The notes beneath the pieces are model-generated. The model was not told the DNA's origin, did not search any database, and saw only the letters and a list, made by a program, of their open reading frames with translations. Positions 15,006-60,485 of a stretch of DNA of 64,000 nucleotides are shown here, piece by piece. The position numbers and the translations under genes are program-made. Positions within the stretch are counted from its first letter, which is position 1. Each line of letters opens with the position of its first letter. Location: positions 62,001-126,000 of IMG/VR virus record IMGVR_UViG_3300032240_001991; one strand, given 5' to 3'.

Positions 15006-15033
15006 GGGCATACTGATAAATATCAGTATGCCC
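15006..15033 (+). promoter_or_regulatory. Perfect 12-bp hairpin containing a late promoter and masking the AUG of the next gene
   Basis: GGGCATACTGAT-aaat-ATCAGTATGCCC; TAAATA at 15017-15022, ATG at 15028. Confidence 0.8.
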
Positions 15034-15282
15034 ACATTTAAAGAAATACTCCTACATACCTTTACTGGACGTGATAACTCCACAATAGACATCGGCCGAA
15101 TAATTTGGATGTTGGGTGCTTTATCTTTTCTAGGCTGCGCATTTTACAGCATATACAAAGGGCAGACTTGGAACGCCGTAGAATTCGGCACCGGGTTCGG
15201 GGCTGTATTAGCAGCAGGCGGAGTTGCTATTAGAATAAAAGCAGATACTGAACCTGACCCTAAAGATAAATCAAATTCATAA
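15028..15282 (+). CDS. Two-TM membrane protein, holin-like candidate
   Basis: TMs IIWMLGALSFLGCAFYSIY and FGTGFGAVLAAGGVAI, charged C-terminus; late promoter. Confidence 0.55.
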   Translation: MPTFKEILLHTFTGRDNSTIDIGRIIWMLGALSFLGCAFYSIYKGQTWNAVEFGTGFGAVLAAGGVAIRIKADTEPDPKDKSNS

Positions 15283-15316
15283 TCGCGTAAATTAAAATTA
15301 CAGCGGGGTTTTACGT

Positions 15317-15883
15317 TTAGCCTATTCGAAATGTAGTCCAAGCACTGGCACCACCTATAGTGACAAAGGCAGTTCTCAAATGAGCAGTGTTAACTAACCC
15401 TGAGTTACTGCTGTAGATGGTTGCACTACCTACAAAGTTATGAGCAGACCCTGCGGCCAATGTCACTGTTCCTGCTACCGCAGTTGACGTATTAATGATA
15501 TACCAATCATATGCCAAGTTTTGAGGCGCGCTGCCACCGTATATAGCATTGAACCCGCCTGATATTATAGTATTAGTTGGAAGGGTCAATGCAATCGTAG
15601 TTCCCCCACCTCCTGACCCTACTAACAGCACTCCGGCGAATATGTTTGACGTTGTTAATGTTGTAGTTGCAGGTAGAAAAACAGGATTGGGTTGATACGT
15701 CAACTGATATCCACCGGTAAATATTAGGTTTTTTGAAGCAAGGATCGAGAGCCCGGCGTATATTCCGCCGGTTGTTTGTATACTTCCAAGGCCTTGAGTA
15801 GCTTCGATAGAACCGTTAACTATTATTTGGCTATCAACCGTTGCTGTTCCGTAGACTCTAGTTCCTGAAAGTAGTTTTGCCAT
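15317..15883 (-). CDS. Putative virion structural (fibre-associated) protein
   Basis: G/T/S/A-rich beta-type sequence; TAAATA 6 nt before the ATG. Confidence 0.6.
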   Translation of the reverse strand: MAKLLSGTRVYGTATVDSQIIVNGSIEATQGLGSIQTTGGIYAGLSILASKNLIFTGGYQLTYQPNPVFLPATTTLTTSNIFAGVLLVGSGGGGTTIALTLPTNTIISGGFNAIYGGSAPQNLAYDWYIINTSTAVAGTVTLAAGSAHNFVGSATIYSSNSGLVNTAHLRTAFVTIGGASAWTTFRIG

Positions 15884-15897
15884 ATAGGTTATTTATT

Positions 15898-16557
15898 TTA
15901 GTACAAAATGCCTGCAGACTGAAAGAAATCATAATCAACTTGATAGTATTCTTTTATTGCAGAGATCTCTTCAGCTGTAGGTGTAGGATCATTGATTAGT
16001 CCGATACTGGCGTTTTCTTTTGTAAAGGTATATGAACTGATATCTAACGAAGCCATTATGTTTGCAATGCTGTTATCAATATCTCTATATGGTAAAAGGG
16101 TGACGTTATCAAAATTACACCAATTTATCTGTGGTTTCATTAAAGGCCAGTAGACACCTGCTGTTTCTGCAAAATTTGTTTTCAAAAAATCTATAATTTT
16201 AATATTTCTCAGCGCAGTTTGTATTTCCGGGGATAACTGATCAAAGGGTGTTCGATCAAGAAAAGACATTTCAATAGAATCTCCATAGAAATAGTGTATC
16301 ATGTCAGGGATACATCCTGGTCTGGTTCTTATGTAATTCCATGTTGATAAAAATCTATCAACCGGATCTCTATGCAGGCAAAACATTTTAATGCCGGGGT
16401 CGGGAAAAAATTTCTGATTAAATTCTTGATAATTTGTATGATTGTGTAGACATTCGTCAAAGAGAACGCCCGTGGATTGTAGACAGGTCACCAGACTGGT
16501 GGTTGCGGTTTTGGGATTTAAAAATATTGCAACGGATTTTTCTGCTGAATAGATCAT
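15898..16557 (-). CDS. Sulfotransferase (Sulfotransfer_2-like)
   Basis: 5'-phosphosulfate loop NPKTATTSL and 3'-phosphate motif RDPVDRFLSTW; PQ..W motif. Confidence 0.85.
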   Translation of the reverse strand: MIYSAEKSVAIFLNPKTATTSLVTCLQSTGVLFDECLHNHTNYQEFNQKFFPDPGIKMFCLHRDPVDRFLSTWNYIRTRPGCIPDMIHYFYGDSIEMSFLDRTPFDQLSPEIQTALRNIKIIDFLKTNFAETAGVYWPLMKPQINWCNFDNVTLLPYRDIDNSIANIMASLDISSYTFTKENASIGLINDPTPTAEEISAIKEYYQVDYDFFQSAGILY

Positions 16558-16787
16558 GATTTTAATTTTTCGATATTTAAATTTTGTGCGGCAATGATGT
16601 CAAAATTGGCGTTTATGAAATCTCTAATTTTCATCCCGTTCAGATCGAGAACAGGAACAACAGAATATTCTTCACTTGTTACTCTCTTGCCCGTATTATA
16701 ATCAACAGTCGATATTCTGAAAACTATATTTTCACTGACACCGGGTATAATTTCGAGCGCATGTTTATAAGCAGGAAATGTGTTCAT
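16554..16787 (-). CDS. Hypothetical protein
   Basis: Coupled between the fibre gene and the sulfotransferase. Confidence 0.65.
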   Translation of the reverse strand: MNTFPAYKHALEIIPGVSENIVFRISTVDYNTGKRVTSEEYSVVPVLDLNGMKIRDFINANFDIIAAQNLNIEKLKS

Positions 16788-16788
16788 G

Positions 16789-25305: not shown

Positions 25306-25402
25306 GATACGATCCTTTTTTGTATAGACATATTTAAAATATTATGTTAGCACATTAAATAATTTAGAGTCAAGAAAAATATTACAGATAATAAATAATC
25401 AT

Positions 25403-25654
25403 ATGAGAGCTCAAGAATTTATTTCAGAAAAGAAGGCCAGTGCTAAGATCTGCCGTAAGGGTAGAGAAGGCAAACGTATTGCTACCAGTATGCGTAGCAG
25501 TTGTGTAAGTCAGGGCCTAATGCCTCATAAGACCGGACACACTGCTGGAACCGGTAAGCAGGGTGTTAAAGGCTCTGGCGTAAAACTTGATGGAAAGACT
25601 CTCAAAGGTACAAAGTACAACGGACCGGTACAAGATTATAGCGGTAAGGGTTAA
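25403..25654 (+). CDS. Small basic protein with a capsid-targeting-like N-terminus
   Basis: MRAQEFISE then K/G/R-rich; TAAATA 5 nt before the ATG. Confidence 0.75.
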   Translation: MRAQEFISEKKASAKICRKGREGKRIATSMRSSCVSQGLMPHKTGHTAGTGKQGVKGSGVKLDGKTLKGTKYNGPVQDYSGKG

Positions 25655-25801: not shown

Positions 25802-26356
25802 ATGTTTAACTTCATAAAATTTGTTACAGAATCTAAGAAAAAGAAGTTAGAACAAGTGTCTTTACCTTACGGAAAAGATGATCTTGGCCGTAGCCTCAGC
25901 AAGTATACTCTTGATTTGCATTATGGTAAGCTTTATAAAGCCTACGTAGATCGTTTTAATAAAGGACTAGGTGATTTAGATTTTAATGAAGCAGGCGCAT
26001 TTCTTCACGCCATTTATTTTACTCAATTTAAATCTCCTGTTAGTAACAATAAACCAACAGAACAGAGTTTAGAATTTATTGAAAAACATTTCAAAAGTTT
26101 TGATAATTTTAAAAAAGAGTTTTTAAGAATTGCTATGAGCATACAAGGAAGTGGTTGGGTGTACCTTGCTGGTGATGGCGAGATCAAGACTATTAAAAAT
26201 CACGAAATTAAAAATGACATCGTGCTCTTAATAGATTGGTGGGAGCATGCTTGGGTATTAGATTTTGGTAGCGATAAAGAACGCTATCTAGATAAGCAAT
26301 GGAATATTGTTGATTGGTCTAAAATAAATTATCTCTTGCAGGGAATGTCTAAATAA
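25802..26356 (+). CDS. Fe/Mn superoxide dismutase
   Basis: LPY, LHYGK..KAYV, LHAIYF, GSGWVYL, DWWEHAW; all four metal ligands present (H, H, D, H). Confidence 0.9.
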   Translation: MFNFIKFVTESKKKKLEQVSLPYGKDDLGRSLSKYTLDLHYGKLYKAYVDRFNKGLGDLDFNEAGAFLHAIYFTQFKSPVSNNKPTEQSLEFIEKHFKSFDNFKKEFLRIAMSIQGSGWVYLAGDGEIKTIKNHEIKNDIVLLIDWWEHAWVLDFGSDKERYLDKQWNIVDWSKINYLLQGMSK

Positions 26357-26373
26357 AGTTAGAGGTACATAAA

Positions 26374-26709
26374 ATGAAAAAGTTACTTTTAATTGTTGCA
26401 TTGTTAATTCCTTTTACTTCTGCTTATGCAGATCATGAGCGTCGTGAATATCGTGAACACAGAGAATGGCACGAACAAGGAAACCATTTTGGTTGGGGCG
26501 AATTTGTTGGAGGTCTTATCCTTGGCGGAATTATTGCCCATGAAGTTAATGGTCGTTACTATGACACTGACGAACATGAAGTCCGTCGCATAACCACCTG
26601 TTATGAGTACCCAGTAGTAGATCAATACGGACATTATGTGTATGATGATTGGGGTCACTTAATGACCGAGCGTCGTTGTCGCGACGAATGGGTCAGGGTT
26701 AGACGTTGA
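26374..26709 (+). CDS. Secreted/periplasmic protein with a Gly-zipper segment
   Basis: Signal peptide MKKLLLIVALLIPFTSAYA; GWGEFVGGLILGGIIA. Confidence 0.7.
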   Translation: MKKLLLIVALLIPFTSAYADHERREYREHREWHEQGNHFGWGEFVGGLILGGIIAHEVNGRYYDTDEHEVRRITTCYEYPVVDQYGHYVYDDWGHLMTERRCRDEWVRVRR

Positions 26710-27035
26710 TCTTAGTTACTCAAAATGCCGCTGATTATATCCAAAAAATCCTCAAAGAGGAAGGCGATAATTTAGTATTAAGAATTAGCGTTAAGGGCGG
26801 TGGCTGTTCTGGATTTAAGTACGATTTTTCTTTGGTAGACCCTACTTGGATAAATTTGGAAGAATATGTTCTTGTAGAGTCTGCCGGAGTGAAAGTAATA
26901 TTAGACACAATAAGTGGACAATACCTAGAAGGTTCTACTTTAGATTTTAAGAAGCGTTTGTTCAGCAGTGAATTTGTTTTATATAATCCCAAAGCACGCA
27001 ATACCTGCGGATGCGGCAATAGTTTTTCAGCATGA
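26706..27035 (+). CDS. iscA: IscA/HesB A-type Fe-S cluster carrier
   Basis: LRISVKGGGCSGFKY, LEGSTLDF, NPKARNTCGCGNSF. Confidence 0.93.
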   Translation: MILVTQNAADYIQKILKEEGDNLVLRISVKGGGCSGFKYDFSLVDPTWINLEEYVLVESAGVKVILDTISGQYLEGSTLDFKKRLFSSEFVLYNPKARNTCGCGNSFSA

Positions 27036-27277
27036 AAAAATATCGTAGGATAGCGTCTTGGACTTTGCGTATACGTCCTAAGGAAGAATATCGTTTTGAT
27101 GAATTGGGAGAAGTAATACTAGCTCCTGATATAGGTTCTCCCTTTTTGCATTGGTACACTCCTAATAATAAACTATCCGCTACTACTACACTAGACGAAC
27201 ACATGGTAGTATCTACTCCGGTCCGTATAGTAAATGGGTCTGACGATTTTATCTTAGTAAATGTTATTGAAATCTAA
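27032..27277 (+). CDS. Hypothetical protein
   Basis: 4-bp overlap with iscA. Confidence 0.55.
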   Translation: MKKYRRIASWTLRIRPKEEYRFDELGEVILAPDIGSPFLHWYTPNNKLSATTTLDEHMVVSTPVRIVNGSDDFILVNVIEI

Positions 27278-27282
27278 CATGG

Positions 27283-27311
27283 TTGACATTACTGGTAAAA
27301 TCTCTTATACT
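27283..27311 (+). promoter_or_regulatory. Early promoter with GGTAAAA box upstream of the DNA ligase gene
   Basis: TTGACA-ttactGGTAAAAtctct(17)-TATACT. Confidence 0.85.
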
Positions 27312-27342
27312 CTTAACTCATTAAACAAACACAGAGAGATCT

Positions 27343-28644
27343 ATGTATCAAATTATTCGTGAACTTGAAGCAGATAATAGCCGTTTGGCTAAAGAAGCTA
27401 TCATTAAGCGTGAAGCTGACGCGGGCAACGAAGAATTCTTTGAAGGTTGTCGCTTGGCTTTAGATAATTTAGTTAGTTTTGGGGTCAAGCAGGTTCCTAA
27501 ACATAGTGGCCCAGATGGGCAAGGTCTGCCGTGGGCAGCATTTGTTCAGTTGGCCGGTAGCCTGTATCGTCGCGAACTAACTGGGCATGATGCTCGAGAT
27601 GCAATTGAACTTGCACTCACTGTCAGTACACAGGCACAATGGAATGATTGGTACCGTCGCATCCTTATTAAGGACTTGCGTTGCGGTGTTAGTGAGAAGA
27701 CTATTAACAAATGTGTTAAGGATACTTCAATTAAACCTGTTCCTGTTTTTGAGTGTATGCTAGCACATGATGGTGCTAATCACGAAAAGAAGATTGCGGG
27801 TAAGAAGCTGCTGGAACCTAAGCTTGATGGCGTGCGTGTTCTTACGGTCGTTAACATGGATAACCGTACTGTAACACAATATACTAGAAACGGCAAAGTG
27901 CTAGAAAACTTTGGACACATTACCAAAGCAATTGAAGAAAATATTGATCTTTTTGGTCGTAGCCTCGTGCTTGACGGAGAGATGATCAGTACCAGCTTCC
28001 AAGCTCTTATGAAGCAGGTACATCGCAAAGACAATGTCAAAGCAGACGATGCTGTGTTGATGCTATTTGACATCTTGCCACTCACTGAGTTTCAGGCAGG
28101 CAAGAGTGTACTTGGACAACGCCGCCGCAGTAATCTGTTGAAGAGTTTTAAGCCAGTGTTTGATAAAATTGGTAACATTGGAGTCATCACGCAAACAGAG
28201 GTTGATCTCAACGAATTTGCAGGTGACCTGCTGTTTAAAGAATTTAACAAGAAGGCAATTGAAGATGGCTTTGAGGGCATCATGATCAAAGATTCAGAAG
28301 CCAAGTATGAATGCAAACGTTCAACGTCTTGGCTCAAGCAGAAACCATTTATTGAAGTTAGCCTTACAGTAGTTGATATTGAAGAAGGCACTGGGCGTAA
28401 CGAAGGTAAATTAGGCGCACTGGTCTGCGAAGGTGAAGATGATGGCAAGAATATTAAGGTCAATGTTGGGTCTGGATTCACTGACGATGATCGTGCAGGC
28501 TTTTGGCCAGAACGTGATTTTATGAAAGGTCAGGTAGTTGAAGTTCGCGCTGATGCTATTACCCAAAACCAAGACGGCACTTATAGTCTACGCTTCCCGC
28601 GCTTTCTGCGTTTCCGTGGATTTGCTGTAGGAGAAAAAATCTAA
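27343..28644 (+). CDS. ATP-dependent DNA ligase
   Basis: Motif I EPKLDGVR, III LDGEM, IIIa LFDI, IV EGIMIK, V WLKQK, VI SLRFPRFLRFR. Confidence 0.95.
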   Translation: MYQIIRELEADNSRLAKEAIIKREADAGNEEFFEGCRLALDNLVSFGVKQVPKHSGPDGQGLPWAAFVQLAGSLYRRELTGHDARDAIELALTVSTQAQWNDWYRRILIKDLRCGVSEKTINKCVKDTSIKPVPVFECMLAHDGANHEKKIAGKKLLEPKLDGVRVLTVVNMDNRTVTQYTRNGKVLENFGHITKAIEENIDLFGRSLVLDGEMISTSFQALMKQVHRKDNVKADDAVLMLFDILPLTEFQAGKSVLGQRRRSNLLKSFKPVFDKIGNIGVITQTEVDLNEFAGDLLFKEFNKKAIEDGFEGIMIKDSEAKYECKRSTSWLKQKPFIEVSLTVVDIEEGTGRNEGKLGALVCEGEDDGKNIKVNVGSGFTDDDRAGFWPERDFMKGQVVEVRADAITQNQDGTYSLRFPRFLRFRGFAVGEKI

Positions 28645-28868
28645 TGGACAAATGCCCTCAAGTAGAAATTATGGAGCTTAAAGAAAAGCTTGACGAATTT
28701 CATGCACACGAAGCACTAGATCGTGTGCATATAGTAATGATAATGATTGACGAAATTTTATCAAAACATCCTTATATTGAAGAAGATAAGGATATTAAAC
28801 AGGCTATTGAAGATGCTGCCGATCATCTTGCAAAAGCGTATCAGCTTATCGGTCAAAAACATTTATAG
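28644..28868 (+). CDS. Hypothetical protein
   Basis: 1-bp overlap with the ligase gene; DEFHAHEALDR motif. Confidence 0.7.
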   Translation: MDKCPQVEIMELKEKLDEFHAHEALDRVHIVMIMIDEILSKHPYIEEDKDIKQAIEDAADHLAKAYQLIGQKHL

Positions 28869-28883
28869 GAGTTTAAGACGACA

Positions 28884-29102
28884 GTGGCGAAAGAAGAAGC
28901 GATTCAGTTAGAAGGTTTTGTTGAAGAAGTATTACCCAACGCAATGTTTCGGATAAAGATCAACGAGAAACACCAAGTTATTGCAGTCATCTCTGGAAAG
29001 ATGCGGCAACACAAGATTCAGATCCTTACTGGTGATAAAGTCAAAGTAGAAGTTAGCCCTTACGATCTTAGCAAGGGCCGTGTTACTTATCGCGAAAAAT
29101 AA
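28884..29102 (+). CDS. infA: Translation initiation factor IF-1
   Basis: [24 protein letters not shown]...[31 protein letters not shown]; AGGAG RBS. Confidence 0.97.
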
Positions 29103-33475: not shown

Positions 33476-34063
33476 TCTAATACCTTCCGCAGCTAGCTGT
33501 TGACAGGTTTTACATTTGCCGCATGGCTGTATACTATTTTCACCGTATACTGGCGTACGACAGCTCCAAAACATATTTCTAAGTGACTCCGGCAACCCGT
33601 CATATATCTCACGCTTGCTCATATTGAGCACAGGATAGATTTTGGTTACCACAGTAAATGCCGCCAGTATCTTATCAGCTCGTACACGACGTTCATTTAA
33701 ACTGTGATTAGCGTCATTGGCATTCATACCCATAGCAACATGTTTGATATTAGGATTCACGCTACAGATATAGCCAGCAAAGAAGTTCATGCTGTCAGTA
33801 TCATACATGAACTGTTTATTATAAGGTTGTGATGCTATTTGACTTTCGCTGTATATAAAACTATAACCTAATTGTTCTAGCTCTTTAAGAGCAAGCTCTA
33901 CTGCAATGGCTTCTGCACGGTCTCTATGCTCAATATTTTGATTATGCACATGATGTACGTGAATTACATAATCTTTATATTCAGGTGCAGTTAATAATTT
34001 GTATACCATGCCTAGGCTATCAAGACCGCCCGAGTACATAGCTAGTATTTGTGGTTGTTCCAT
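33470..34063 (-). CDS. QueC-like PP-loop ATPase (start refined to MEQPQ)
   Basis: MYSGGLDS PP-loop; SC...PCGKCKTC Zn-binding tail. Confidence 0.7.
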   Translation of the reverse strand: MEQPQILAMYSGGLDSLGMVYKLLTAPEYKDYVIHVHHVHNQNIEHRDRAEAIAVELALKELEQLGYSFIYSESQIASQPYNKQFMYDTDSMNFFAGYICSVNPNIKHVAMGMNANDANHSLNERRVRADKILAAFTVVTKIYPVLNMSKREIYDGLPESLRNMFWSCRTPVYGENSIQPCGKCKTCQQLAAEGIRL

Positions 34064-34509
34064 ATGTAAAATGAATAGACGTCGTTGACCTCTATCTCCT
34101 GTGGTTGTGGCGTAAGTTCGTGTGCGCGAGGAAAATATACAGCATATTTGGCTGGCCAACTGGCTCTTAGAAATGTACGGGCTACAAAGCGATCACAGTG
34201 TGCTAACACTATTGGCAACAATCGAGCAGTAAACTCTGCCCCAAATGCTAGTCCTCCGTCAATGATAATAGTATCAAAGTGTTCGTTGATTTCAAACCAA
34301 TCTTTATTTTTAAGCTTTTCGTTAGCGTATTTGGGCTCTAAATCCCACGCTTCAGTAGCTAGCGGCAATAATAACTGTGTACTACCTAAAAGTAATACAC
34401 GACCATAGGCGTACTGTTCAAACACCTTATAATCTTTGTCGTTAGGCGAAGCTGGCCACTTCAAGTTAGTCCAGTATTCATTATCTGCGTGTATTTTATG
34501 GTCAAGCAC
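34042..34509 (-). CDS. Hypothetical, methyltransferase-like Rossmann fragment (GTG start inferred)
   Basis: VLLLGST...DWF...FDTIIIDGG; TAAATA 8 nt before GTG 34509. Confidence 0.5.
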   Translation of the reverse strand: MLDHKIHADNEYWTNLKWPASPNDKDYKVFEQYAYGRVLLLGSTQLLLPLATEAWDLEPKYANEKLKNKDWFEINEHFDTIIIDGGLAFGAEFTARLLPIVLAHCDRFVARTFLRASWPAKYAVYFPRAHELTPQPQEIEVNDVYSFYIWNNHKY

Positions 34510-34573
34510 AAGACTGTTATTTATGGATGACAAACGGTAAATATTAGATAAAATTGTCACACGAGAAAGAACT

Positions 34574-38016: not shown

Positions 38017-38085
38017 TTAATGTCTCCTTTGTGTACAATTATTTAACTAATTTTTACCAAAATTATTCTACTAAATACATTTACT

Positions 38086-38322
38086 ATGTCAGCAAACGGA
38101 ATTTCTACAATAACTGTACCAGGTGATCCAACAGCCACAAAATTGGCTAGACGCAACGCTAAATTAGCTGCTGCTACTGCTAAAAGAAGTAGCCTTACTA
38201 CTAGTACTTGGTATAGAACATTACATACCATAACAGGCACACACGTAGCCTATGTTAATGGAGCACTTAACAGTTCTGTAAGTGGTACCACTAGCCCATC
38301 AACTGGACATCCTTGGGTATAA
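38086..38322 (+). CDS. Small virion-type hypothetical protein
   Basis: MSANGIST...K..R..KL..A..KR pattern; TAAATA 8 nt before the ATG. Confidence 0.7.
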   Translation: MSANGISTITVPGDPTATKLARRNAKLAAATAKRSSLTTSTWYRTLHTITGTHVAYVNGALNSSVSGTTSPSTGHPWV

Positions 38323-38379
38323 AAAGTCGTTGATTCTAAATCAATAATGCTATAATATGCGCATATTAAATATGAGCAT

Positions 38380-41300
38380 ATGAATAACCCTATAAAGATT
38401 GCATTTATTGACTGTATTGGTCTCAATTATGACGGAACCACATTAACTAAAAAAGGCATTGGTGGTTCGGAAAGTTCTATTATTTCTGTTGCAAAAGAAC
38501 TTGCAAAATTAAATTTTCAAGTTTTTGTTTTCAACGACTGTGAAACATCAGAAACTAGTCCTGGATTTTACGATAACGTTCTCTATTACCCTATGCGTAC
38601 TTTAGGAGAGCATGACTTTGATTTTGATATCGTAATCAGCCAACGTACAGTAATTCCTTTTACTCCAATTGAGTTGTACGATCAAGTAAGACAACCACCT
38701 CCAAGAGACTATGATCCAACTATCTTTAGACAGGTACAAAGACCTAATCAATTAAAGATACTGTGGATGCAAGACACTTTTATTTGGGGAGATAATCTCC
38801 TTGAATATCTGGTGATCAATAATCACATAAATGAAATTTTTAATATTAGTGACTGGCACATTTCCTATACGACAAATTGCAACCACGGTGTTAAAAGACA
38901 GTTTGAAGTTCTTAAAGATAAGATGTTCCTAACTAGAAACGCAATCAATCGTTGGATAGATTGGGTAGACATTAAAGAAAAGGATCCTAATCTTTTTGTT
39001 TATAATGCGTCAATTACTAAAGGAATGATGCCGTTAGTGCAACGCATATGGCCTAGATTAAAACAACATCTACCTGATGCTAAATTAAAGATCATTGGCG
39101 GGTACTATGCGTTTAGAACCGAACCACTTAGTCCTGCACAACAACAATGGGTTACCTTACAGCAAAGCGTAGCACATGACACTTCTATAGAGTTTACAGG
39201 TGTTATTCCTCAGCCTCAGATTGCAGAAATAATGGCCAAGGCCAGTTACTTTCTTTATCCGGGAGCTTACCCTGAAACATCAGGAATAAGCACAATAGAA
39301 AGTATCAATTATAATACTCCTATTATTGGAACTCGTTTTGGTGCAATGGAAGAATCTGGTACAGAGGATGCTAGCTATTTTATTGACTATGCTATAGAAC
39401 CAAACGGGTTATATCCATGGATCAATGTTGATCAACAAGTAGATCGTTATGTTGAACTAGTATTAAAGGTTGTTAATAATAGATATCTACATCAGCAGAA
39501 ACAATATGCATGTAACGCTGTTAAAGACATATCAACCTGGGATACTGTTGCGCTGCAATGGAAGCAACATTTCTACTACAAGTTAGGACTTGAATTACTT
39601 GCAGAAGAAAAAGAAAAAGTAGAGTGGATCAATTATCGTGTTCATAAAGTTTTTAAAAGAAGATTTATGAACCCTGAGGAAGTCATTGTAACTCCTCCAT
39701 CTCAGATTGAACCTCTGCCTGAAAATAAAAAAGTAAAGGTTGCATTTGTTGATATTGTAGGTATGACATACGACGGCGACACACTTAATCAAAAAGGTTT
39801 AGGCGGAAGTGAGAGTGCTGTTATTCTCTGCAGTCGTGAAATGGTTAAGCTAGGCATTGATGTTACTGTATTCAACGCTTGCGACGAAGCTGACAGCAAG
39901 CCAGGAATATATGACGGTGTACGTTATCGTCCTCTAGCAGAGATTGCTACAGACTTTGAAAGATACGATGTAGTTATTAGTAGTCGTGTTGTAACACCGT
40001 TTATAACTCCGCCGTGGTATGGCTACCCTCAACAGACAAATCGTAAGTTTGATTATACTGCGTTTGAAAGAATGAGAGAATATGCCAAACTTAAAGTATT
40101 TTGGATGCATGATACTTTCTGTTGGGGAGACGATATATTAGAAGATCTAGTATCAGCGGGAGCAATTGACGAAATCTGGACGCTAAGTGATTTTCATACC
40201 AATTACGTAATGAACTGCGCACATCCAAAACTAAGGAACTACGAAGTTCTTAGAAATCACGTTTGGACTACACGCAACGGGTTAGTCAAGTATTTTAATT
40301 CAGTTGATATTGAATCTAAAGATCCTAACCTGTTTATATTCAATGCCAATATGAGTAAAGGACTGGATCCCCTGTTGAACTCTGTTTGGCCAAAGGTGCT
40401 ACAAAGAATTCCATCGGCTAAGTTAGTAGTAATGGGCGGGCATTATAAACTTGGTGCAGCTTTTGCTCATAACGACGAAGAAACAGAGTTTATGAAAGTT
40501 GTTGGAGCACATTTAAATAATCCATCAATTACCTTTACAGGTATTATCAGTCAACGTGAAGTTGCCTTATGGAGTGCACAGGCCAGTTTCTTTATCTATC
40601 CAACAGCTTTTCCTGAAACATACGGCATTAGTACTTTAGAATCTCTGTATGCAAACACGCCAATGATATCATGCCGCTTTGGTGCATTAGAAGAAACTGC
40701 CAGTCCTCAAGGTTATCTAATTGACTACTCAGCTACTCCAAACGGTTTATATCCCAATGTTGATCTAGAAAGGCAGTCAACTCTGCTTGCTGACCTAGCA
40801 TTAAGTGCTTACAACAACAGAGAAGAACATATTCGCAGAATGAAGGCACTTGATGAGATTAAAGATTTAGCAGGCTGGGACGTAGTAGCATTAGAATGGA
40901 AACAACACTTTTATAATAAATTAGGTCTATATCTAAGCCCTAGCGAATCTAGACAGGCAAATTATACTAAGAGTAAGTATCACAAAGTTTTTAATAGAAG
41001 ATTTAGCACAGAAGAAGAATGGCTAGCACCTAAACAACTTGCTGAAAAACATATTGTAATTATAAGTCCTTTCTATAATGCAAAGGATTATATTGAACGT
41101 TGTATTGCTAGTGTTGCATCTCAAGATTACAACAACTATCATCATATTTTAATTGATGATTGTAGTAATGATGATGGACAATCTGTAGCCGAAAACTATA
41201 TTTCTTGGTTGCCTAATAATTTAAGAAATAAATTTTATCTAATAAGAAATTTAACTAACTGCGGAGCAGTCTTTAATCACATAACATCAATTAGAGAAGT

Positions 41301-42441
41301 TAACGACGATTCAATTATAATGTTGTTAGATGGTGACGACAGCCTAGTTAATCGCCCAGATATCCTTACCTATTATAATAAGATACATCAAGATTATGAT
41401 TTTACATACGGTTCCTCTTGGAGTATGGTCGACAACATCCCTTTAATCAGTCAACCATATCCCCCAAATGTTAAAGAAACAAAGTCGTACAAAAATTATA
41501 AGTTTAACTGGATAGTTCCTTATACACATTTGAGAACGATGAAAGCGTTTTTATTGAAAAAAGAACCAGACAGTGTTTTCCAAGATCGCGATGGTAATTG
41601 GTTTAAAGCAGGGGGTGACCTGTCAACATTCTATACCGCATTGAAAAATTGTGATCCTAACAGAGTTTTTGTTGTTCCAGATATAGTTTATAATTATAAT
41701 GACGCTAGTCCTCTAAATGATTATAAAGTTAATAAAGAAGAACAGGATCGTACGGTTCAGTCTATAATAAGAACTACTTCTTTAGAACTTAAAATTCCTG
41801 CTAACACACCCCCAAAAATAGAAGAACCTGCTCCGCCAGCAAAGAAGAGAATACTTATTGCTATTCCAACTAACAGAAACATAGAAGCTGAAACTTTTAA
41901 AAGTATATACAATCTAATCATACCTGACGGTTATACTGTAGAATTCCAATATTTCTGGGGATATCAAGTTGACCAAGTTAGAAATCTTATTGCTCACTGG
42001 ATTATTAATTACGGATATAATTATCTGTTTGCCGTAGATAGTGACATTGCGTTTGCTCCAGATACACTTGTTAAGCTGCTATCTCATGATAAAGATCTTG
42101 TTAGTGGTATCTATGTACAACGTATTCCAGGCAGACACACTATTGAGATTATGCGTAAGAATAATCAAGGTGGAGTAAGCCATGTTGATTGGAATGAAAT
42201 TCGTGGACAAGGATTAATACAAATTGAAGGCTGCGGGTTTGGATGTGTATTAGTCAAGGCTGAAGTTTTCAAAGCAATTCCTTACCCGCATTTCTTATAT
42301 CATAGTGCAATTGATCATGCCAATACACTAAGTGAAGATGTACACTTCTGTAATCAAATGAGAGACAGAGGATTTAGTCTATGGGCAGATACTAGTATAA
42401 TCTGCGATCACATAGGTTCTTGGACATTTAAAGTAGAATAA
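38380..42441 (+). CDS. Multidomain glycosyltransferase (two GT-B repeats, GT2, second GT-A)
   Basis: Internal duplication GIGGSESS / GLGGSESA, each with a YP..YPET.GIS..E donor loop; IISPFYNA...DDCSND...LLDGDD; ILIAIPT...FAVDSD. Confidence 0.88.
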   Translation: MNNPIKIAFIDCIGLNYDGTTLTKKGIGGSESSIISVAKELAKLNFQVFVFNDCETSETSPGFYDNVLYYPMRTLGEHDFDFDIVISQRTVIPFTPIELYDQVRQPPPRDYDPTIFRQVQRPNQLKILWMQDTFIWGDNLLEYLVINNHINEIFNISDWHISYTTNCNHGVKRQFEVLKDKMFLTRNAINRWIDWVDIKEKDPNLFVYNASITKGMMPLVQRIWPRLKQHLPDAKLKIIGGYYAFRTEPLSPAQQQWVTLQQSVAHDTSIEFTGVIPQPQIAEIMAKASYFLYPGAYPETSGISTIESINYNTPIIGTRFGAMEESGTEDASYFIDYAIEPNGLYPWINVDQQVDRYVELVLKVVNNRYLHQQKQYACNAVKDISTWDTVALQWKQHFYYKLGLELLAEEKEKVEWINYRVHKVFKRRFMNPEEVIVTPPSQIEPLPENKKVKVAFVDIVGMTYDGDTLNQKGLGGSESAVILCSREMVKLGIDVTVFNACDEADSKPGIYDGVRYRPLAEIATDFERYDVVISSRVVTPFITPPWYGYPQQTNRKFDYTAFERMREYAKLKVFWMHDTFCWGDDILEDLVSAGAIDEIWTLSDFHTNYVMNCAHPKLRNYEVLRNHVWTTRNGLVKYFNSVDIESKDPNLFIFNANMSKGLDPLLNSVWPKVLQRIPSAKLVVMGGHYKLGAAFAHNDEETEFMKVVGAHLNNPSITFTGIISQREVALWSAQASFFIYPTAFPETYGISTLESLYANTPMISCRFGALEETASPQGYLIDYSATPNGLYPNVDLERQSTLLADLALSAYNNREEHIRRMKALDEIKDLAGWDVVALEWKQHFYNKLGLYLSPSESRQANYTKSKYHKVFNRRFSTEEEWLAPKQLAEKHIVIISPFYNAKDYIERCIASVASQDYNNYHHILIDDCSNDDGQSVAENYISWLPNNLRNKFYLIRNLTNCGAVFNHITSIREVNDDSIIMLLDGDDSLVNRPDILTYYNKIHQDYDFTYGSSWSMVDNIPLISQPYPPNVKETKSYKNYKFNWIVPYTHLRTMKAFLLKKEPDSVFQDRDGNWFKAGGDLSTFYTALKNCDPNRVFVVPDIVYNYNDASPLNDYKVNKEEQDRTVQSIIRTTSLELKIPANTPPKIEEPAPPAKKRILIAIPTNRNIEAETFKSIYNLIIPDGYTVEFQYFWGYQVDQVRNLIAHWIINYGYNYLFAVDSDIAFAPDTLVKLLSHDKDLVSGIYVQRIPGRHTIEIMRKNNQGGVSHVDWNEIRGQGLIQIEGCGFGCVLVKAEVFKAIPYPHFLYHSAIDHANTLSEDVHFCNQMRDRGFSLWADTSIICDHIGSWTFKVE

Positions 42442-43701: not shown

Positions 43702-43713
43702 AATAAATAAAGG

Positions 43714-45024
43714 ATGCGTATAACAGAAATTTTATTAGAAGGTAAAAAAGAAGAGTTTATTAGAGCACTAAAGGACTTTGTTCCTTTAGCCAAAAAAACT
43801 CTAGAATTAGATTCTTTACCTAAAATAAAATTTCTAAGATCTGTTGAAGACCCTACACAACCTACTTTTGGAAAGTATGTAAATCATAAAAAGACTATCT
43901 ATCTAGCCGTTGAAAATAGACACATTATAGATGTTTTAAGAACCTTAGCACACGAACTTGTGCATTACAAGCAAGATTTAGAAGGTAGATTAGGCCCTAA
44001 AAGCGGAAAAACAGGAAGTCCAGAAGAAAACGAGGCGCACGCAATAGCCGGTATTGTGATGCGTAGATTTGATAAGAAGTTCCGTCACTACTTTCATGAC
44101 CAGCCCTTAGATGGGTTAGAAGAAGGAAAAAACTGGAACGAATTTAAGAGAAAATTAAAACATACAGGACAAGTAGCAACCGGAATGGCTGTAGGAATAG
44201 GAGCGTTAAAAGGATACGATTACCTTAACAATAAACCAGAACCAGCTCCTCAAGCACAATCTCAGCCAGCTCCAGCTGTAGATTATGACGAGTTTAACCA
44301 ATATGACTACGAAGTGCCGCCTGACGAAACAGTTCCTGAAATTGAAGCGGACAAAGAACGCATAGTACAGCAAGCAGCAAAAGTAAAAAAGTTAAAAGTA
44401 CCACATTCTGATAGTAAGCCTGCTGCAAAAAAAGGAAAAATATCAAGAGCCGAACAACAAAAACTAGCATATGTTAACGCACAAAAAATGTTGAAGCTAC
44501 CTGATCCATACGAAAACTATGTTAAAGAAATTGCAATAGCAGAGGGCATTGTTGGAGAAGAATTAGATCAATTTTTAGGACAGTTAGCACACGAAAGTGC
44601 TAACTTTACTGCTTTTGAAGAAAGAGCAGACAGTACCGGAAAAAACTACTTTATTAAGAAATATTGGAAAGATAAAGAAAAAAGAACTAAGTTAGGAAAT
44701 GTGCAATTAAGTGATGCCTGGAGATATCGTGGGAGAGGTCTTATACACTTAACAGGTAGAGATAACTACCAAAGGGCTGGCAAGGCTCTTGGATTTGATC
44801 TAGTTGGTAACCCTCACTTAGCATCAAAACCTGATATAGCAATTAAGATTGCAATATGGTACTGGAAAAATAGAGTTTCTAATAAAGTGTCACCGGAAGA
44901 AATGAGCAACACGGGTAAAGTTACACACTGTATCAATCCTGGTGCTAACAAGACAAATGTTGAAAAACGTAATAGTCGAGTCAGTTGGTTCCGTCGGTTC
45001 TTTGGTAGCGGTGGCGCGGGATAA
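43714..45024 (+). CDS. Zincin-motif plus GH19 lysozyme fusion with a capsid-targeting-like N-terminus
   Basis: MRITEILLE; LRTLAHELVHYKQ...ENEA (HExxH); FLGQLAHESANF, YRGRGLIHLTGRDNY. Confidence 0.85.
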   Translation: MRITEILLEGKKEEFIRALKDFVPLAKKTLELDSLPKIKFLRSVEDPTQPTFGKYVNHKKTIYLAVENRHIIDVLRTLAHELVHYKQDLEGRLGPKSGKTGSPEENEAHAIAGIVMRRFDKKFRHYFHDQPLDGLEEGKNWNEFKRKLKHTGQVATGMAVGIGALKGYDYLNNKPEPAPQAQSQPAPAVDYDEFNQYDYEVPPDETVPEIEADKERIVQQAAKVKKLKVPHSDSKPAAKKGKISRAEQQKLAYVNAQKMLKLPDPYENYVKEIAIAEGIVGEELDQFLGQLAHESANFTAFEERADSTGKNYFIKKYWKDKEKRTKLGNVQLSDAWRYRGRGLIHLTGRDNYQRAGKALGFDLVGNPHLASKPDIAIKIAIWYWKNRVSNKVSPEEMSNTGKVTHCINPGANKTNVEKRNSRVSWFRRFFGSGGAG

Positions 45025-57556: not shown

Positions 57557-57853
57557 GTGAATATGTTAATTAAAAAAGGTCCCACTATTGGCGATGTAGT
57601 GAGTATTAAAATCATCAACGGTGATGAGATTATTGCAAGATTTGAAGGTGAAGATAATGACAGTATCACGTTTAGCCGTCCGTTAGCAGTTTTGCTAGAC
57701 CCGCGTGGCGGAATGGGTATGATCCCATGGATGTTCCTTGGGGACGCAGAATCTCATACGATTCTTAGAAATCAATATTTTAGTATGGTTCCTACTAAGG
57801 AAGATGCTGCTAAACAATATATGGAAGGTACTACTGGTATAGCCTTGCGATAA
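57557..57853 (+). CDS. Small conserved phage protein (Sm-like fold possible)
   Basis: VVSIKIINGDEIIAR...RPL...Y..GTTGI; AAGGAG RBS. Confidence 0.75.
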   Translation: MNMLIKKGPTIGDVVSIKIINGDEIIARFEGEDNDSITFSRPLAVLLDPRGGMGMIPWMFLGDAESHTILRNQYFSMVPTKEDAAKQYMEGTTGIALR

Positions 57854-57862
57854 ATATAGATA

Positions 57863-58258
57863 ATGTCAAACATCTATGTTAGTTCGTCAACAGGTTGGAT
57901 AGTTGTTTCCACAACTACCGTTACACTTAGTCCAGGAGATATATTAACTCCTCAAAGTGGATCTCTTGTTATCGACTATTCGCCGGTACTAGAAAGAATA
58001 GCAGTTGCTTTAGAAGGCATACAAGCTATGAATTCTAGTACTCAGAATAAACTAGGATCGGTGTTAGACCTTGGTACATCAACAGGTATTAGAGTTACTA
58101 CTCCTTATGAGTGGACTAAAGGAATTTCTGCATATGAATGGTATGTACAGCAAATTCATTTACTCAGACCGGAAATGACCACATCTACTACATACGATGA
58201 GATGGTTACATCTGTAAATGCTATTTTAACTGCAACAGATTTCCCATCCTTCGTATAA
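57863..58258 (+). CDS. Putative virion protein
   Basis: TAAATA 6 nt before the ATG; LERIA.ALE motif. Confidence 0.65.
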   Translation: MSNIYVSSSTGWIVVSTTTVTLSPGDILTPQSGSLVIDYSPVLERIAVALEGIQAMNSSTQNKLGSVLDLGTSTGIRVTTPYEWTKGISAYEWYVQQIHLLRPEMTTSTTYDEMVTSVNAILTATDFPSFV

Positions 58259-59234: not shown

Positions 59235-59263
59235 TTGACAACATTCCTAAATTGTTGTATAGT
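59235..59263 (+). promoter_or_regulatory. sigma70 promoter of tmRNA
   Basis: TTGACA-17 nt-TATAGT. Confidence 0.8.
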
Positions 59264-59269
59264 TTTTTT

Positions 59270-59600
59270 AATGGTAGTAAACTTTTAGCTAAAGGTGTTT
59301 TGGACGGGGGTGCGATTCCCCCCACCTCCACCAAAAGCATATGACTCTGGATACTGTGGTGCACATACGGTTCCTGAACATTAGGATAATAGGTAGTCCT
59401 AGTATGCTTTTGATGGGGGTGACCAGTTTCGACAGAGCAAGTAATAACCTGAAGGCTACCAGTGAGGCGACTGACTTAATCAGCGCAAAAACTATAAACG
59501 CAAACGATGACGTTTATGCTATGGAGCTTGCTGCTTAATTGCAGAGTTAGCATACCAGAGCTAACCACTTGTTAACAGAACGGTTAAGTAGGGGGAGTAA
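59270..59600 (+). ncRNA. ssrA: Permuted (two-piece) tmRNA: acceptor piece about 59270-59333, intervening segment 59334-59414, coding piece 59415-about 59590; tag ANDDVYAMELAA
   Basis: T-arm GGGGG-TGCGATT-CCCCC and CACCTCC-A-CCA come before the 5' GGGGGTG..TTTCGAC; G3:U70 pair; resume codon GCA at 59500, stop at 59536-59538. Confidence 0.93.
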
Positions 59601-59620
59601 AATCTCCCTATTTTATATTT
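59589..59620 (+). terminator. Terminator after tmRNA
   Basis: TAGGGGGAG-taaaa-TCTCCCTA followed by TTTTATATTT. Confidence 0.7.
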
Positions 59621-59625
59621 AGACA

Positions 59626-60258
59626 ATGAGAGAAATAATGAAAATTAAAGATAAATTGTATCCTAATGGTTCACCATACGAAAATGCAGAAATTTTACCG
59701 TACGATACACAGCATTTTCTTAATTATCCAACAGCATTAGTGCAAGGTATACAAACTATTCTTCCAAAAAGAATTATAGAAGTTGGATCATGGAAAGGTC
59801 ACTCTGCTAACTACATGGCAAAAGTTTGCCTACAATATACAGACAATTTTGAAATTGTTTGTATTGATACTTTTCTAGGTTCTGCTGAACATTATACACA
59901 TCCTGATCACTCAAAGGGATTACCTAGAAAAAATAATCTTACTAACCTGTTAAGTACTTTTCTTTCTAATACTATTCAAGAAAATAATACCAAATATATT
60001 ACTCCATTCCCTGTTGATTCAAATACTGGATTTCTTGTATTAAAAGAATGGGGATACCTTGCAGATTTAATCTACATTGACGGATCGCATGATTATAGAT
60101 CGGTCACTATTGACATTATGAACTACAGACAACTTGTAAGACGAGGAGGGGTTATGATCTTTGACGATTACCTGCATCCTCCTACAGGATATGCAATTGA
60201 CGATAATCTTAGCGGCGGTCAGGTGATTGACGGAAAATACTTTTGGGTTAATAACTAG
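59626..60258 (+). CDS. Class I SAM methyltransferase (Methyltransf_24-like)
   Basis: IIEVGSWKGHS, VCIDTF.GS, LIYIDGSH.Y, GGVMIFDDY. Confidence 0.88.
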   Translation: MREIMKIKDKLYPNGSPYENAEILPYDTQHFLNYPTALVQGIQTILPKRIIEVGSWKGHSANYMAKVCLQYTDNFEIVCIDTFLGSAEHYTHPDHSKGLPRKNNLTNLLSTFLSNTIQENNTKYITPFPVDSNTGFLVLKEWGYLADLIYIDGSHDYRSVTIDIMNYRQLVRRGGVMIFDDYLHPPTGYAIDDNLSGGQVIDGKYFWVNN

Positions 60259-60260
60259 TT

Positions 60261-60452
60261 TTATTTCTTTTTACCAGACTTCATATTAGCACACCAATGC
60301 GCCATTCTGCGTTTTTCGCCTGTGCTATTTTTAGCAACGCTGCGCAGTTTGCTTACACTCTGCTTGCAATTGACACCTGAACGTTTGGCTAGTCCTTTGC
60401 GACCCGGCTTTTTGCCATCAGCAAAGTTTTCTAGTAACTCATTTATACGCAT
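60261..60452 (-). CDS. Small basic protein with a capsid-targeting-like N-terminus
   Basis: MRINELLE then a K/R-rich module; TAAATA 4 nt before ATG 60452. Confidence 0.8.
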   Translation of the reverse strand: MRINELLENFADGKKPGRKGLAKRSGVNCKQSVSKLRSVAKNSTGEKRRMAHWCANMKSGKKK

Positions 60453-60485
60453 CACGTATTTATGATTGAATAAATTAAGTACACT

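What the first reader, a model, noticed from the sequence alone, without database searches (positions are those of the whole stretch)
15017..60462. A class of late genes appears to be translated from leaderless mRNAs
Seen: TAAATA lies only 4-8 nt before the start codon, with no usable SD, at 15028 (5 nt), 15883 minus (6), 25403 (5), 34509 minus (8, GTG), 38086 (8), 38380 (7), 43714 (4), 57863 (6) and 60452 minus (4). Other late genes have long leaders with AGGA(G). Known: T4 late transcripts start a few nt after TATAAATA, and leaderless initiation uses 70S ribosomes and is common in alphaproteobacteria. Inference: the phage routes part of its late programme through leaderless initiation. Such mRNAs could be differently sensitive to host shut-off and could link to the phage IF-1.
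Basis: partly seen in the sequence, partly recalled or inferred. Interest (0 to 1): 0.65.

Follow-up and report, generated by a model that had tools for sequence, protein, structure and literature searches.

The report
Late promoters fused to start codons
In this uncultured ~327-kb jumbo phage and its many relatives, about half of the T4-style late promoters (TAAATA) sit exactly 5 (4-8) bases before the start codon with no ribosome-binding site, so genes such as terminase and tail tube are most likely expressed from leaderless mRNAs; this has not been reported for T4-type phages and no RNA data exist to prove it.

Summary
All nine TAAATA-N(4-8)-start sites are present. Genome-wide, 37 of 252 TAAATA copies (14.7%) lie 4-8 nt before an ATG that opens an ORF, against about 1.6% for other hexamers of the same composition (p = 5e-24). 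The spacer peaks at 5 nt. T4 late-promoter geometry puts the transcription start 5 nt after the box, so that spacing places +1 on the A of ATG.

- **Sigma factor:** the phage encodes a gp55-like late sigma. It is a Rak2/PA5oct-like myovirus.
- **Two promoter classes:** another 42 TAAATA copies have 15-40 nt before an SD-led start.
- **Conservation:** three 259-353 kb relatives show the same signal. The order terminator, TAAATA, N5, ATG is kept in 74 of 76 terminase orthologues and 20 of 20 tail-tube orthologues, down to 34% protein identity, with variable SD-free spacers.
- **Absent elsewhere:** T4, PA5oct, CBB and Phosso lack the layout.
- **Start codons:** they are supported by coding potential from codon 1, upstream stops, divergent-unit heads, and orthologue or paralogue N-termini.
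- **Weak points:** no RNA runs exist, so no TSS is mapped. Site 15028 is doubtful. The alphaproteobacteria, IF-1 and shut-off links are not supported.

Verdict: a new variant of a known kind. The precedents are the Thermus phages phiYS40 and Lalka27a.

The parts
15017..15282 (+). TAAATA 15017-15022, 5-nt spacer, ATG 15028, ORF of 84 aa. This is the doubtful member.
   Evidence: The site is present. The coding score of codons 1-40 is negative. The only family hit is a weak PHROG match at E = 0.0035. No orthologue was found. The motif lies in the loop of a 12-bp inverted repeat.
15317..15895 (-). TAAATA 15895-15890, 6-nt spacer, ATG 15883, ORF of 188 aa with unknown function.
   Evidence: It is the first start in its ORF, with an in-frame stop 9 nt upstream. 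The coding score from codon 1 is +10.6 and there is no SD-led alternative start. It is an ORFan in viral contigs.
25392..25654 (+). TAAATA 25392-25397, 5-nt spacer, ATG 25403, ORF of 83 aa starting MRAQEF. It heads a divergent unit.
   Evidence: Orthologues in G001 and G002 keep TAAATA-N5-ATG. The nearest upstream gene is divergent, 97 nt away. The ORF belongs to the MRxxE[FIL] N-terminal family.
34042..34523 (-). TAAATA 34523-34518, 8-nt spacer, GTG 34509, ORF of 155 aa. It sits back to back with the leadered promoter 34538-34543 (+).
   Evidence: The GTG aligns residue for residue with the ATG of orthologue L179, which has TAAATA+7. L177 and L178 have TAAATA+6-ATG with stops directly upstream.
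38072..38322 (+). TAAATA 38072-38077, 8-nt spacer, ATG 38086, ORF of 78 aa. It is divergent from the leadered promoter 38045-38040 (-).
   Evidence: It is the first start in its ORF. The G001 orthologue (60% identity) has the same N-terminus behind TAAATA plus an 18-nt leader containing AAAGGA.
38367..42441 (+). TAAATA 38367-38372, 7-nt spacer, ATG 38380, a 1353-aa multi-domain glycosyltransferase.
   Evidence: Pfam finds Glyco_trans_1_4 and Glycos_transf_2. The next in-frame start is at codon 71 and has no SD. The G001 orthologue (71% identity) has TAAATA+9-ATG.
43704..45024 (+). TAAATA 43704-43709, 4-nt spacer, ATG 43714, a 436-aa protein with a GH19/endolysin-like C-terminal domain and an MRITEIL N-terminus.
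   Evidence: phrog_181 scores 2e-33 and PF00182 matches. The paralogue at genome 233206 has the same MRITEI N-terminus behind a GGAG SD, which fixes the start codon. The relative L119 has TAAATA-N5-ATG.
57851..58258 (+). TAAATA 57851-57856, 6-nt spacer, ATG 57863, ORF of 131 aa. The TAA of the motif is the stop codon of the upstream gene.
   Evidence: The coding score from codon 1 is +5.8, and the nearest SD-led alternative start is at codon 55. It is an ORFan. Translational coupling cannot be excluded here.
60261..60462 (-). TAAATA 60462-60457, 4-nt spacer, ATG 60452, ORF of 63 aa starting MRINELL. It heads a divergent unit.
   Evidence: The divergent neighbour starts 33 nt away. The ORF belongs to the MRxxE[FIL] family.
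26350..29102 (+). Example of the leadered class. TAAATA 26350-26355, an 18-nt stretch containing GAGGT, then ATG 26374, followed by a tight gene array that ends with DNA ligase (27343-28644) and phage IF-1 (28884-29102).
38016..38045 (-). Leadered late promoter. TAAATA 38045-38040, 23 nt containing AAGGAG, then ATG 38016.

Best explanation
TAAATA (extended a-a/t-TAAATA, with no -35 element) is the late promoter of this phage clade. It is read by host RNA polymerase carrying the phage's gp55-like sigma factor.

As in T4, transcription should begin 5 nt after the box. In about half of the roughly 80 predicted late promoters the start codon has been placed at that point. The spacer is 4-8 nt with a mode of 5, so the mRNA begins with AUG or with 1-3 extra bases and carries no Shine-Dalgarno sequence.

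These messages would then be translated by the leaderless route: a 5'-terminal AUG bound by 70S ribosomes or IF2 with fMet-tRNA. The other half of the late promoters give short leaders of about 10-35 nt with a normal SD.

Shown: the motif, its geometry, its conservation, the sigma gene and the validity of the start codons. Inferred: the exact 5' ends and the mode of translation initiation.
For: 1. Statistics. 37 of 252 TAAATA copies sit at spacer 4-8 before an ORF-opening ATG, against about 1.6% for controls (p = 5e-24). The raw spacer profile peaks at 5 nt in four genomes (18, 17, 15 and 19 against about 3). TAAATA is under-represented, 252 observed against 414-538 expected.
2. Promoter identity. 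The gp55 homologue at genome 288768-289685 matches phrog_12791 at 4e-88 and T4 gp55 by phmmer at 5e-8. The T4 box spans -13 to -6 and lacks a -35 element (PMC2988020). No -35 conservation is seen here. The same hexamer lies 15-40 nt before 42 SD-led starts, with A at 60% at the 6th and 7th bases after it. The motif precedes sheath, tail tube, TerL, adaptor, baseplate and virion genes.
3. TSS on the AUG. Position -1 is a pyrimidine in 31 of 38 sites against 73 of 166 SD-led genes (p = 2e-5), and in all 30 distinct TerL spacers. Start codons are 36 ATG and 2 GTG.
4. Conservation. The order terminator hairpin, TAAATA, N5, ATG is kept in 74 of 76 TerL loci at 70-87% protein identity, with 30 different spacers. 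It is kept in 20 of 20 tail-tube loci at 34-62% identity, with unrelated hairpin sequences. Of 54 orthologue pairs, 30 keep the layout and 7 switch to TAAATA plus an SD leader.
5. True starts. Nearly all sites are the first start in their ORF, with a stop 3-40 nt upstream. The start-codon frame has the best coding score over codons 1-40 in 38 of 38 sites, and 27 of 38 have no SD-led alternative within 120 codons.
6. Coupling. At least 8 sites head divergent units, with the divergent neighbour's start 22-170 nt upstream and no closer co-directional gene, so translational coupling is impossible there.
Against: - No transcript 5' end has been mapped. No RNA run holds this sequence, and metagenome contigs gave no transcript-like ends.
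- Spacers of 4 or 6-8 nt imply either a flexible TSS or 1-3-nt leaders.
- Ten sites lie 25 nt or less behind a co-directional gene, and four use the motif's TAA as that gene's stop. Read-through mRNA and reinitiation may contribute there.
- Leaderless mRNAs are translated poorly in E. coli-type hosts, yet tail tube is a high-copy protein. The host is unknown.
- No gp45 homologue was found by phmmer. gp33 was not searched.
- 17 of 54 orthologue pairs have no TAAATA within 60 nt.
Confidence: 0.75

Rival explanations
1. These genes are translated from longer polycistronic late mRNAs by SD-independent reinitiation or 70S scanning after the upstream stop codon. The A/U-rich TAAATA only supplies a stop codon or an unstructured landing pad, and is not a promoter at these positions.
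For: Ten of 38 sites lie 25 nt or less downstream of a co-directional gene. Four use the TAA of the motif as that gene's stop, including window site 57863.
Against: - Other TAA-containing A4T2 hexamers (TAATAA, TTAAAA, ATTAAA, TAAAAT) show no enrichment.
- At least 8 sites head divergent units.
- TerL and tail tube are preceded by an intrinsic terminator in nearly all relatives.
- The spacing is fixed relative to the ATG and not to the upstream stop.
- The same hexamer occurs at variable distance before SD-led starts.
Confidence: 0.1
2. The start codons are mis-called. The TAAATA promoters are real, but the true starts are downstream SD-led codons, so the mRNAs carry ordinary leaders that happen to contain an ATG.
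For: Eleven of 38 sites have some SD-led in-frame start within 120 codons, for example at codon 18 in gene 169324 and codon 27 in gene 33906. Site 15028 has no coding signal.
Against: - The start-codon frame has the best coding score over codons 1-40 in 38 of 38 sites, and 27 of 38 have no alternative start.
- Orthologue N-termini begin at the same codon in TerL, tail tube, 25403 and 34509.
- Paralogues with the same MRITEI N-terminus sit behind a real SD.
- Leadered orthologues place their SD just before the same codon (L042, L043; G001 for 38086 and 232745).
Confidence: 0.05
3. TAAATA at these positions is an RNA processing site, an A/U-rich endonuclease target. Cleavage would yield leaderless or short-leader mRNAs from longer precursors, so the motif does not act as a promoter there.
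For: Primer-extension 5' ends at T4 late promoters cannot always be told apart from processing products (a caution stated in PMC2988020). The motif is A/U-rich.
Against: - A gp55-type sigma is encoded and the motif matches its T4 recognition box.
- The motif is avoided genome-wide on both strands, as expected for a DNA signal.
- At divergent heads only 22-34 nt from the neighbour's start there is no room for another upstream promoter.
Confidence: 0.05

Closest known systems
T4 late promoters (TATAAATA at -13 to -6; gp55 sigma, gp33, gp45 clamp)
   Same: The TAAATA core is the same, there is no -35 element, the segment downstream of the box is AT-rich, and a gp55 homologue is encoded. The motif lies before structural genes and occurs in both orientations.
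   Different: - The full octamer is not enriched. The A(-13) form dominates and only the hexamer is invariant.
- In T4 the layout TAAATA-N4-8-ATG is not enriched, 21 matches against 26 for the control. Here about half of the promoters abut the start codon.
- gp45 was not detected and gp33 was not searched.
Predicted ATAAATA late motif of Rak2-like jumbo phages (CBB, GAP32) and their relatives PA5oct and Phosso
   Same: The phage group is the same: portal and TerL are 43-54% identical. The predicted late motif before structural genes is the same (PMC5259590).
   Different: In CBB, PA5oct and Phosso the motif is followed by 22-30-nt leaders with an SD. TAAATA-N5-ATG is not enriched there: 4 against 10, 15 against 12, and 3 against 2 for the control. 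The PA5oct transcriptome paper reports only sigma70-like promoters and no leaderless mRNAs.
Leaderless transcripts of Thermus phages phiYS40 and Lalka27a
   Same: [quoted passage not shown]
   Different: - Those are unrelated phages in a host phylum where a -10 motif adjacent to the ORF is the host's own common mode (PMC12340547).
- Their late -10 elements differ, for example TAGGGT.
- Their 5' ends were mapped experimentally. Here nothing is mapped, most other genes of the phage use an SD, and the host is unknown.
Genomic signature of bacterial leaderless genes (a -10-like box a fixed short distance before the start codon, as in Deinococcus-Thermus, Actinobacteria and Bradyrhizobium)
   Same: The inference is the same: a promoter box at a fixed short distance before the ATG and no SD.
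   Different: Here the box is recognised by a phage late sigma, not by the housekeeping sigma. The spacing therefore follows gp55 geometry (5 nt), and the class is tied to a temporal programme of a virus.

Membership tests
T4-type (gp55-dependent) late promoter | Conserved TATAAATA-like box about one helical turn upstream of the start site | tested here: met
   The TAAATA core is invariant, and the extended form has A at 26 of 38 and A/T at 32 of 38 sites in the two preceding positions. The exact T4 octamer is not enriched. T4 itself has A(-13) variants.
T4-type (gp55-dependent) late promoter | No conserved -35 element | tested here: met
   Column counts from -40 to -1 in 38 sites show no conserved position other than the two bases before the hexamer.
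T4-type (gp55-dependent) late promoter | The phage encodes a gp55-family sigma factor | tested here: met
   Genome 288768-289685 matches phrog_12791 at 4.2e-88 and phrog_234 at 2.3e-25. phmmer with T4 gp55 gives 4.8e-8.
T4-type (gp55-dependent) late promoter | Co-activation by gp33 and the gp45 sliding clamp | tested here: inconclusive
   phmmer with T4 gp45 found nothing. gp33 was not searched. The CBB paper also found neither protein in that relative. A sequence search may miss divergent homologues.
T4-type (gp55-dependent) late promoter | Drives late or structural genes | tested here: met
   The motif lies before tail sheath, tail tube, TerL, head-tail adaptor, baseplate wedge and virion proteins. 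Timing itself was not measured.
Leaderless mRNA | Primary 5' end at the start codon, or within a few nt of it | not testable with these tools
   No RNA run holds the sequence. The feature is inferred from the 5-nt box-to-ATG spacing, the T4 geometry and the A peak at the 6th-7th base in leadered promoters.
Leaderless mRNA | No Shine-Dalgarno sequence upstream of the start | tested here: met
   The spacers are 4-8 nt. None of the 30 distinct TerL spacers contains GGAG or AGGA.
Leaderless mRNA | AUG (rarely GUG) as the 5'-terminal start codon, which must be the true N-terminus | tested here: met
   Start codons are 36 ATG and 2 GTG. Coding potential, upstream stops and orthologue or paralogue N-termini support the starts.
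Leaderless mRNA | Initiation by 70S ribosomes, or IF2-dependent and IF3-sensitive initiation | not testable with these tools
   This needs toeprinting or in vitro translation.

The most novel reading that the evidence does not exclude
This clade of uncultured jumbo phages has rebuilt its late programme around leaderless initiation and actively retunes the host ribosome for it. Phage IF-1 and phage bS21 both lie downstream of predicted late promoters. In this reading they shift initiation late in infection towards 5'-terminal AUGs, giving SD-free late messages priority over host mRNAs.
Probability: 0.12. Interest if true: 0.85.

Novelty: new variant of a known kind. Interest (0 to 1): 0.6.

Why it matters
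If confirmed, this would be the first T4-superfamily lineage in which a gp55-type late promoter doubles as the translation signal. High-copy virion proteins such as tail tube would then be made from leaderless mRNAs, although most of the phage's other genes use an SD.

Practical consequences:
- It gives a rule for annotating starts and late genes in hundreds of uncultured jumbo-phage contigs: TAAATA-N5-ATG.
- It offers natural paired examples of leaderless and leadered versions of the same gene.
- It makes the long-standing question of why large phages carry IF-1 and bS21 testable in a defined system.

Tried and rejected
- **RNA evidence:** The look-up of sequencing runs returned only three DNA metagenome runs from one study and no RNA. 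Read laying was therefore not used, because contigs cannot show 5' ends.
- **Transcript-like contigs:** a metagenome-contig scan with the tail-tube protein, looking for contigs that start at the ATG, found none.
- **Close cultured relatives:** megablast of the window against phages found nothing.
- **Raw pattern counts:** counts with the tool's reversed-pattern control in relatives were barely informative for N{4,8}. The genomes were fetched and ORF-filtered instead.
- **Window ORFans:** The search for related loci for window genes 15883 and 57863 found no relatives.
- **The 43714 protein:** its relatives are too distant to test the layout, except L119.
- **Sigma family search:** the PF04542 search on the phage's own genome failed on the server. 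It was replaced by phmmer with T4 gp55 and a PHROG scan.
- **gp45:** not found.
- **IF3_C:** not found.
- **Terminators in G000:** a terminator directly upstream is not general in G000 itself, at 4 of 38 sites. It is general for TerL and tail tube across relatives.
- **Literature:** Sevostyanova 2007 (PMC1885378) is not held, so it is cited only through papers that cite it.
- **CheckV completeness:** the estimate of 36% was rejected as misleading. Relatives of 322.5 kb (with direct terminal repeats, 100%) and 353 kb (99%) show the record is near full length.
Full report
**What the window is**

The window is bases 62,001-126,000 of a 326,658-bp IMG/VR virus record. The whole-genome GC content is 38%.

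Portal and large terminase are 43-54% identical to those of Pseudomonas phage PA5oct, Sinorhizobium phage Phosso, Agrobacterium phage Atu_ph07, Pectobacterium phage CBB, GAP32 and Serratia phage BF. The phage is therefore a Rak2/PA5oct-like jumbo myovirus of the T4 superfamily.

Three long uncultured relatives were fetched whole:
- G001: 353 kb, 99% complete.
- G002: 322.5 kb, direct terminal repeats, 100% complete.
- G003: 259 kb.

The record is thus near full length, despite a CheckV estimate of 36%.

**Checking the observation**

All nine sites are in the sequence as described. My own scan of both strands finds exactly those nine in the window and 38 in the genome.

The signal is far above chance:
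- TAAATA occurs 252 times. It is the rarest of the 15 hexamers with four A and two T (364-802 copies for the others).
- 37 of the 252 copies (14.7%) are followed after 4-8 nt by an ATG that opens an ORF of at least 50 aa. The counts at spacers 4-8 are 7, 13, 5, 5 and 7. There are none at spacers 0-3 or 9-11.
- The other permutations give 1-6%. The highest values come from frame-shifted versions of the same motif.
- The binomial p is 5e-24.
- Hexamers that also contain TAA, such as TAATAA and TTAAAA, are not enriched. The effect is therefore not a by-product of stop codons.
- TAAATA is under-represented against k-mer expectation, with 252 observed and 414-538 expected. This fits a signal that is avoided where it is not wanted.

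A second class is also real. 42 TAAATA copies lie 15-40 nt before an SD-led start, which is 16.7% against 2-6% for controls.

The exact T4 octamer TATAAATA is not enriched. The extended consensus is a-(a/t)-TAAATA with no -35 element.

**Why TAAATA is a late promoter**

- The genome encodes a gp55-family late sigma factor at 288768-289685. It matches phrog_12791 at 4e-88, phrog_234 at 2e-25 and T4 gp55 by phmmer at 5e-8.
- The motif precedes tail sheath (31 nt containing AAGGAG), tail tube, TerL, a head-tail adaptor, a baseplate wedge protein and several virion proteins.
- A similar motif, ATAAATA, was already predicted as the late promoter in the relatives CBB and GAP32 (PMC5259590).

**Why the mRNAs should be leaderless**

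- The T4 box spans -13 to -6 (Geiduschek and Kassavetis 2010, PMC2988020). Five bases therefore separate its last A from +1.
- The spacer mode is exactly 5 in all four genomes. Raw counts at 5 nt are 18, 17, 15 and 19, against a background of about 3.
- In the leadered promoters, A reaches 60% at the 6th and 7th bases after the motif, against 32-39% at non-promoter copies. This calibrates the start site independently.
- In the leaderless class the base before the start codon is a pyrimidine in 31 of 38 sites. In SD-led genes it is a pyrimidine in 73 of 166 (Fisher p = 2e-5). This is the usual pyrimidine(-1)/purine(+1) preference at start sites.
- Start codons are 36 ATG and 2 GTG.

**Are the start codons right?**

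- Nearly all are the first possible start in their ORF, with an in-frame stop 3-40 nt upstream.
- A coding model trained without N-terminal regions scores the start-codon frame best over codons 1-40 in 38 of 38 sites. In 27 of 38 there is no SD-led in-frame alternative within 120 codons.
- At least 8 sites have a divergently transcribed gene as their nearest upstream neighbour, with its start 22-170 nt away. Translational coupling is impossible there.
- Only four sites use the motif's TAA as the stop codon of the upstream gene.

**Comparative evidence**

This is the strongest line of evidence.
- **TerL:** 80 IMG/VR relatives were found at 70-87% protein identity. In 74 of the 76 assessable loci the order is intrinsic-terminator hairpin, TAAATA, spacer, ATG (72 with 5 nt, 2 with 4 nt). 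There are 30 different spacer sequences, none SD-like and all ending in T or C. The other two loci (L042, L043) have a leader with an SD instead.
- **Tail tube:** 20 of 20 relatives, down to 34% protein identity, keep terminator, TAAATA, N5, ATG, with hairpins of unrelated sequence.
- **Genome-wide orthologues:** of 54 orthologue pairs in G001-G003, 30 keep the layout, 7 have TAAATA plus an SD leader and 17 have neither.
- **Relatives as a whole:** G001-G003 show the same ORF-filtered enrichment, 10.8-16.1% of TAAATA copies.
- **Outside the clade:** T4 (21 against 26 for the control), PA5oct, Phosso and CBB lack it. Their virion gene next to TerL has TAAATA followed by a 22-30-nt SD leader.

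The layout is therefore a derived trait of this uncultured clade.

**The nine window sites one by one**

| Site | Assessment |
|---|---|
| 25403 | Orthologues keep N5 |
| 34509 (GTG) | Aligns exactly with the ATG of orthologue L179 behind TAAATA+7; L177 and L178 have TAAATA+6 with stops just upstream |
| 38086 | The G001 orthologue has the same N-terminus behind an 18-nt SD leader |
| 38380 (1353-aa glycosyltransferase) | The G001 orthologue has TAAATA+9 |
| 43714 (GH19 endolysin-like) | Shares an MRI(T/N)E(I/L)L N-terminus with a paralogue that sits behind a GGAG SD |
| 60452 | Shares the same MRI(T/N)E(I/L)L N-terminus |
| 15883 | ORFan with good coding signal from codon 1 |
| 57863 | ORFan with good coding signal; coupling is possible because the motif's TAA is the upstream stop |
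| 15028 | Doubtful: negative coding score, and the motif sits in the loop of a 12-bp inverted repeat |

Most window members are accessory or unknown genes. The clearly structural members lie outside the window.

- **RNA data:** there are none, so the TSS claim stays an inference.
- **Host:** it is unknown. The phage's permuted tmRNA scores as the betaproteobacterial type (RF01850, 130.6 bits), so the alphaproteobacterial argument has no support here.
- **IF-1:** the gene (window 28884-29102) is conserved in all four clade genomes. It also occurs in Phosso, which lacks the layout, and in Lak and other phages. The gene lies in a tight array behind the leadered TAAATA at 26350.
- **bS21:** the phage also encodes ribosomal protein bS21 (genome 134235-134390). 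It lies in an array headed by the leaderless gene at 131417.
- These are hints only. No IF3 was found.

**Comparison with what is known**

- Leaderless phage transcripts are established for the Thermus phages phiYS40 and Lalka27a.
- A -10 box next to the ORF is the recognised signature of leaderless genes in several bacterial phyla.
- Jumbo phages with mapped 5' ends show none: phiKZ in the early phase and AR9. The PA5oct study reports none either.
- I found no paper linking T4-type late promoters with leaderless mRNAs.

I therefore rate this a new variant of a known kind. The case is well supported computationally but has not been tested at the RNA level.

Noticed in passing
window 59234-59615 (+): The phage encodes a permuted (two-piece) tmRNA with tag peptide ANDDVYAMELAA. 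Its best Rfam match is beta_tmRNA (130.6 bits; tmRNA_permuted scores 148 bits). This hints at a betaproteobacterial host, not an alphaproteobacterial one.
   Followed up: partly
window 28884-29102 (+): Phage IF-1 (PF01176, 81.6 bits) is the last gene of a tight array that runs from 26374 to 29102, includes DNA ligase, and sits behind a leadered TAAATA at 26350. It is conserved in G001-G003 at 54-71% identity and is also present in phage Phosso and the Lak phages.
   Followed up: partly
genome G000:C1:134235-134390 (+), outside the window: The phage encodes ribosomal protein bS21 (PF01165, 47.5 bits). It lies in a co-directional array headed by the leaderless-class gene at 131417.
   Followed up: partly
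window 23400 (-), 25403, 43714, 49618, 50567, 60452 (-), 62152; genome-wide 16 ORFs: A family of otherwise unrelated ORFs shares an N-terminus M-R/K-x-x-E/D-[FILVM]. Ten of the 16 have TAAATA upstream. From memory only, the motif resembles the capsid-targeting sequence of T4 internal proteins. If so, these would be head-packaged, injected proteins, among them the GH19 enzyme at 43714.
   Followed up: partly
window 12238, 12474, 14988; genome 54890-76988: The element AGCGGGGTA(TT) occurs 8 times, always on the + strand, within 22 kb around the tRNA genes. The copy at 14988 lies just before the 12-bp inverted repeat that encloses the TAAATA of site 15028. Its function is unknown.
   Followed up: no
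window 1688-11208 (cluster) and 38053: The motif TTTACCAAA occurs 29 times in the genome and clusters in the first 11 kb of the window. There it sits inside sigma70-like TTGAC...TATAAT promoters, which may form an early promoter or operator class. A palindromic copy, TAATTTTTACCAAAATTA, lies between the divergent late promoters at 38045 and 38072.
   Followed up: no
loci L042 and L043 (TerL relatives); G001-G003 orthologues of genome gene 232745: These are natural swaps between leaderless and leadered versions of the same gene. Two TerL relatives carry an SD leader (L042 has TAAATA plus 35 nt containing AGAGG). Conversely, G000 gene 232745 is leaderless while its three orthologues have 18-22-nt SD leaders.
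   Followed up: yes
window 38380-42441 (+): A 1353-aa protein combines GT4-type, GT2-type and a third glycosyltransferase-like domain (PF13692, PF00534, PF00535; phrog_2170, phrog_1574).
   Followed up: no
window 18430-20391 (-) and 21987-23177 (-): Tail-fibre proteins with collagen triple-helix repeats (PF01391, 132 bits) lie in a minus-strand block of virion genes.
   Followed up: no
whole record G000: CheckV completeness is given as 36%. Close relatives are complete at 322.5 kb (direct terminal repeats) and 353 kb, so the 326.7-kb record is probably almost complete.
   Followed up: partly
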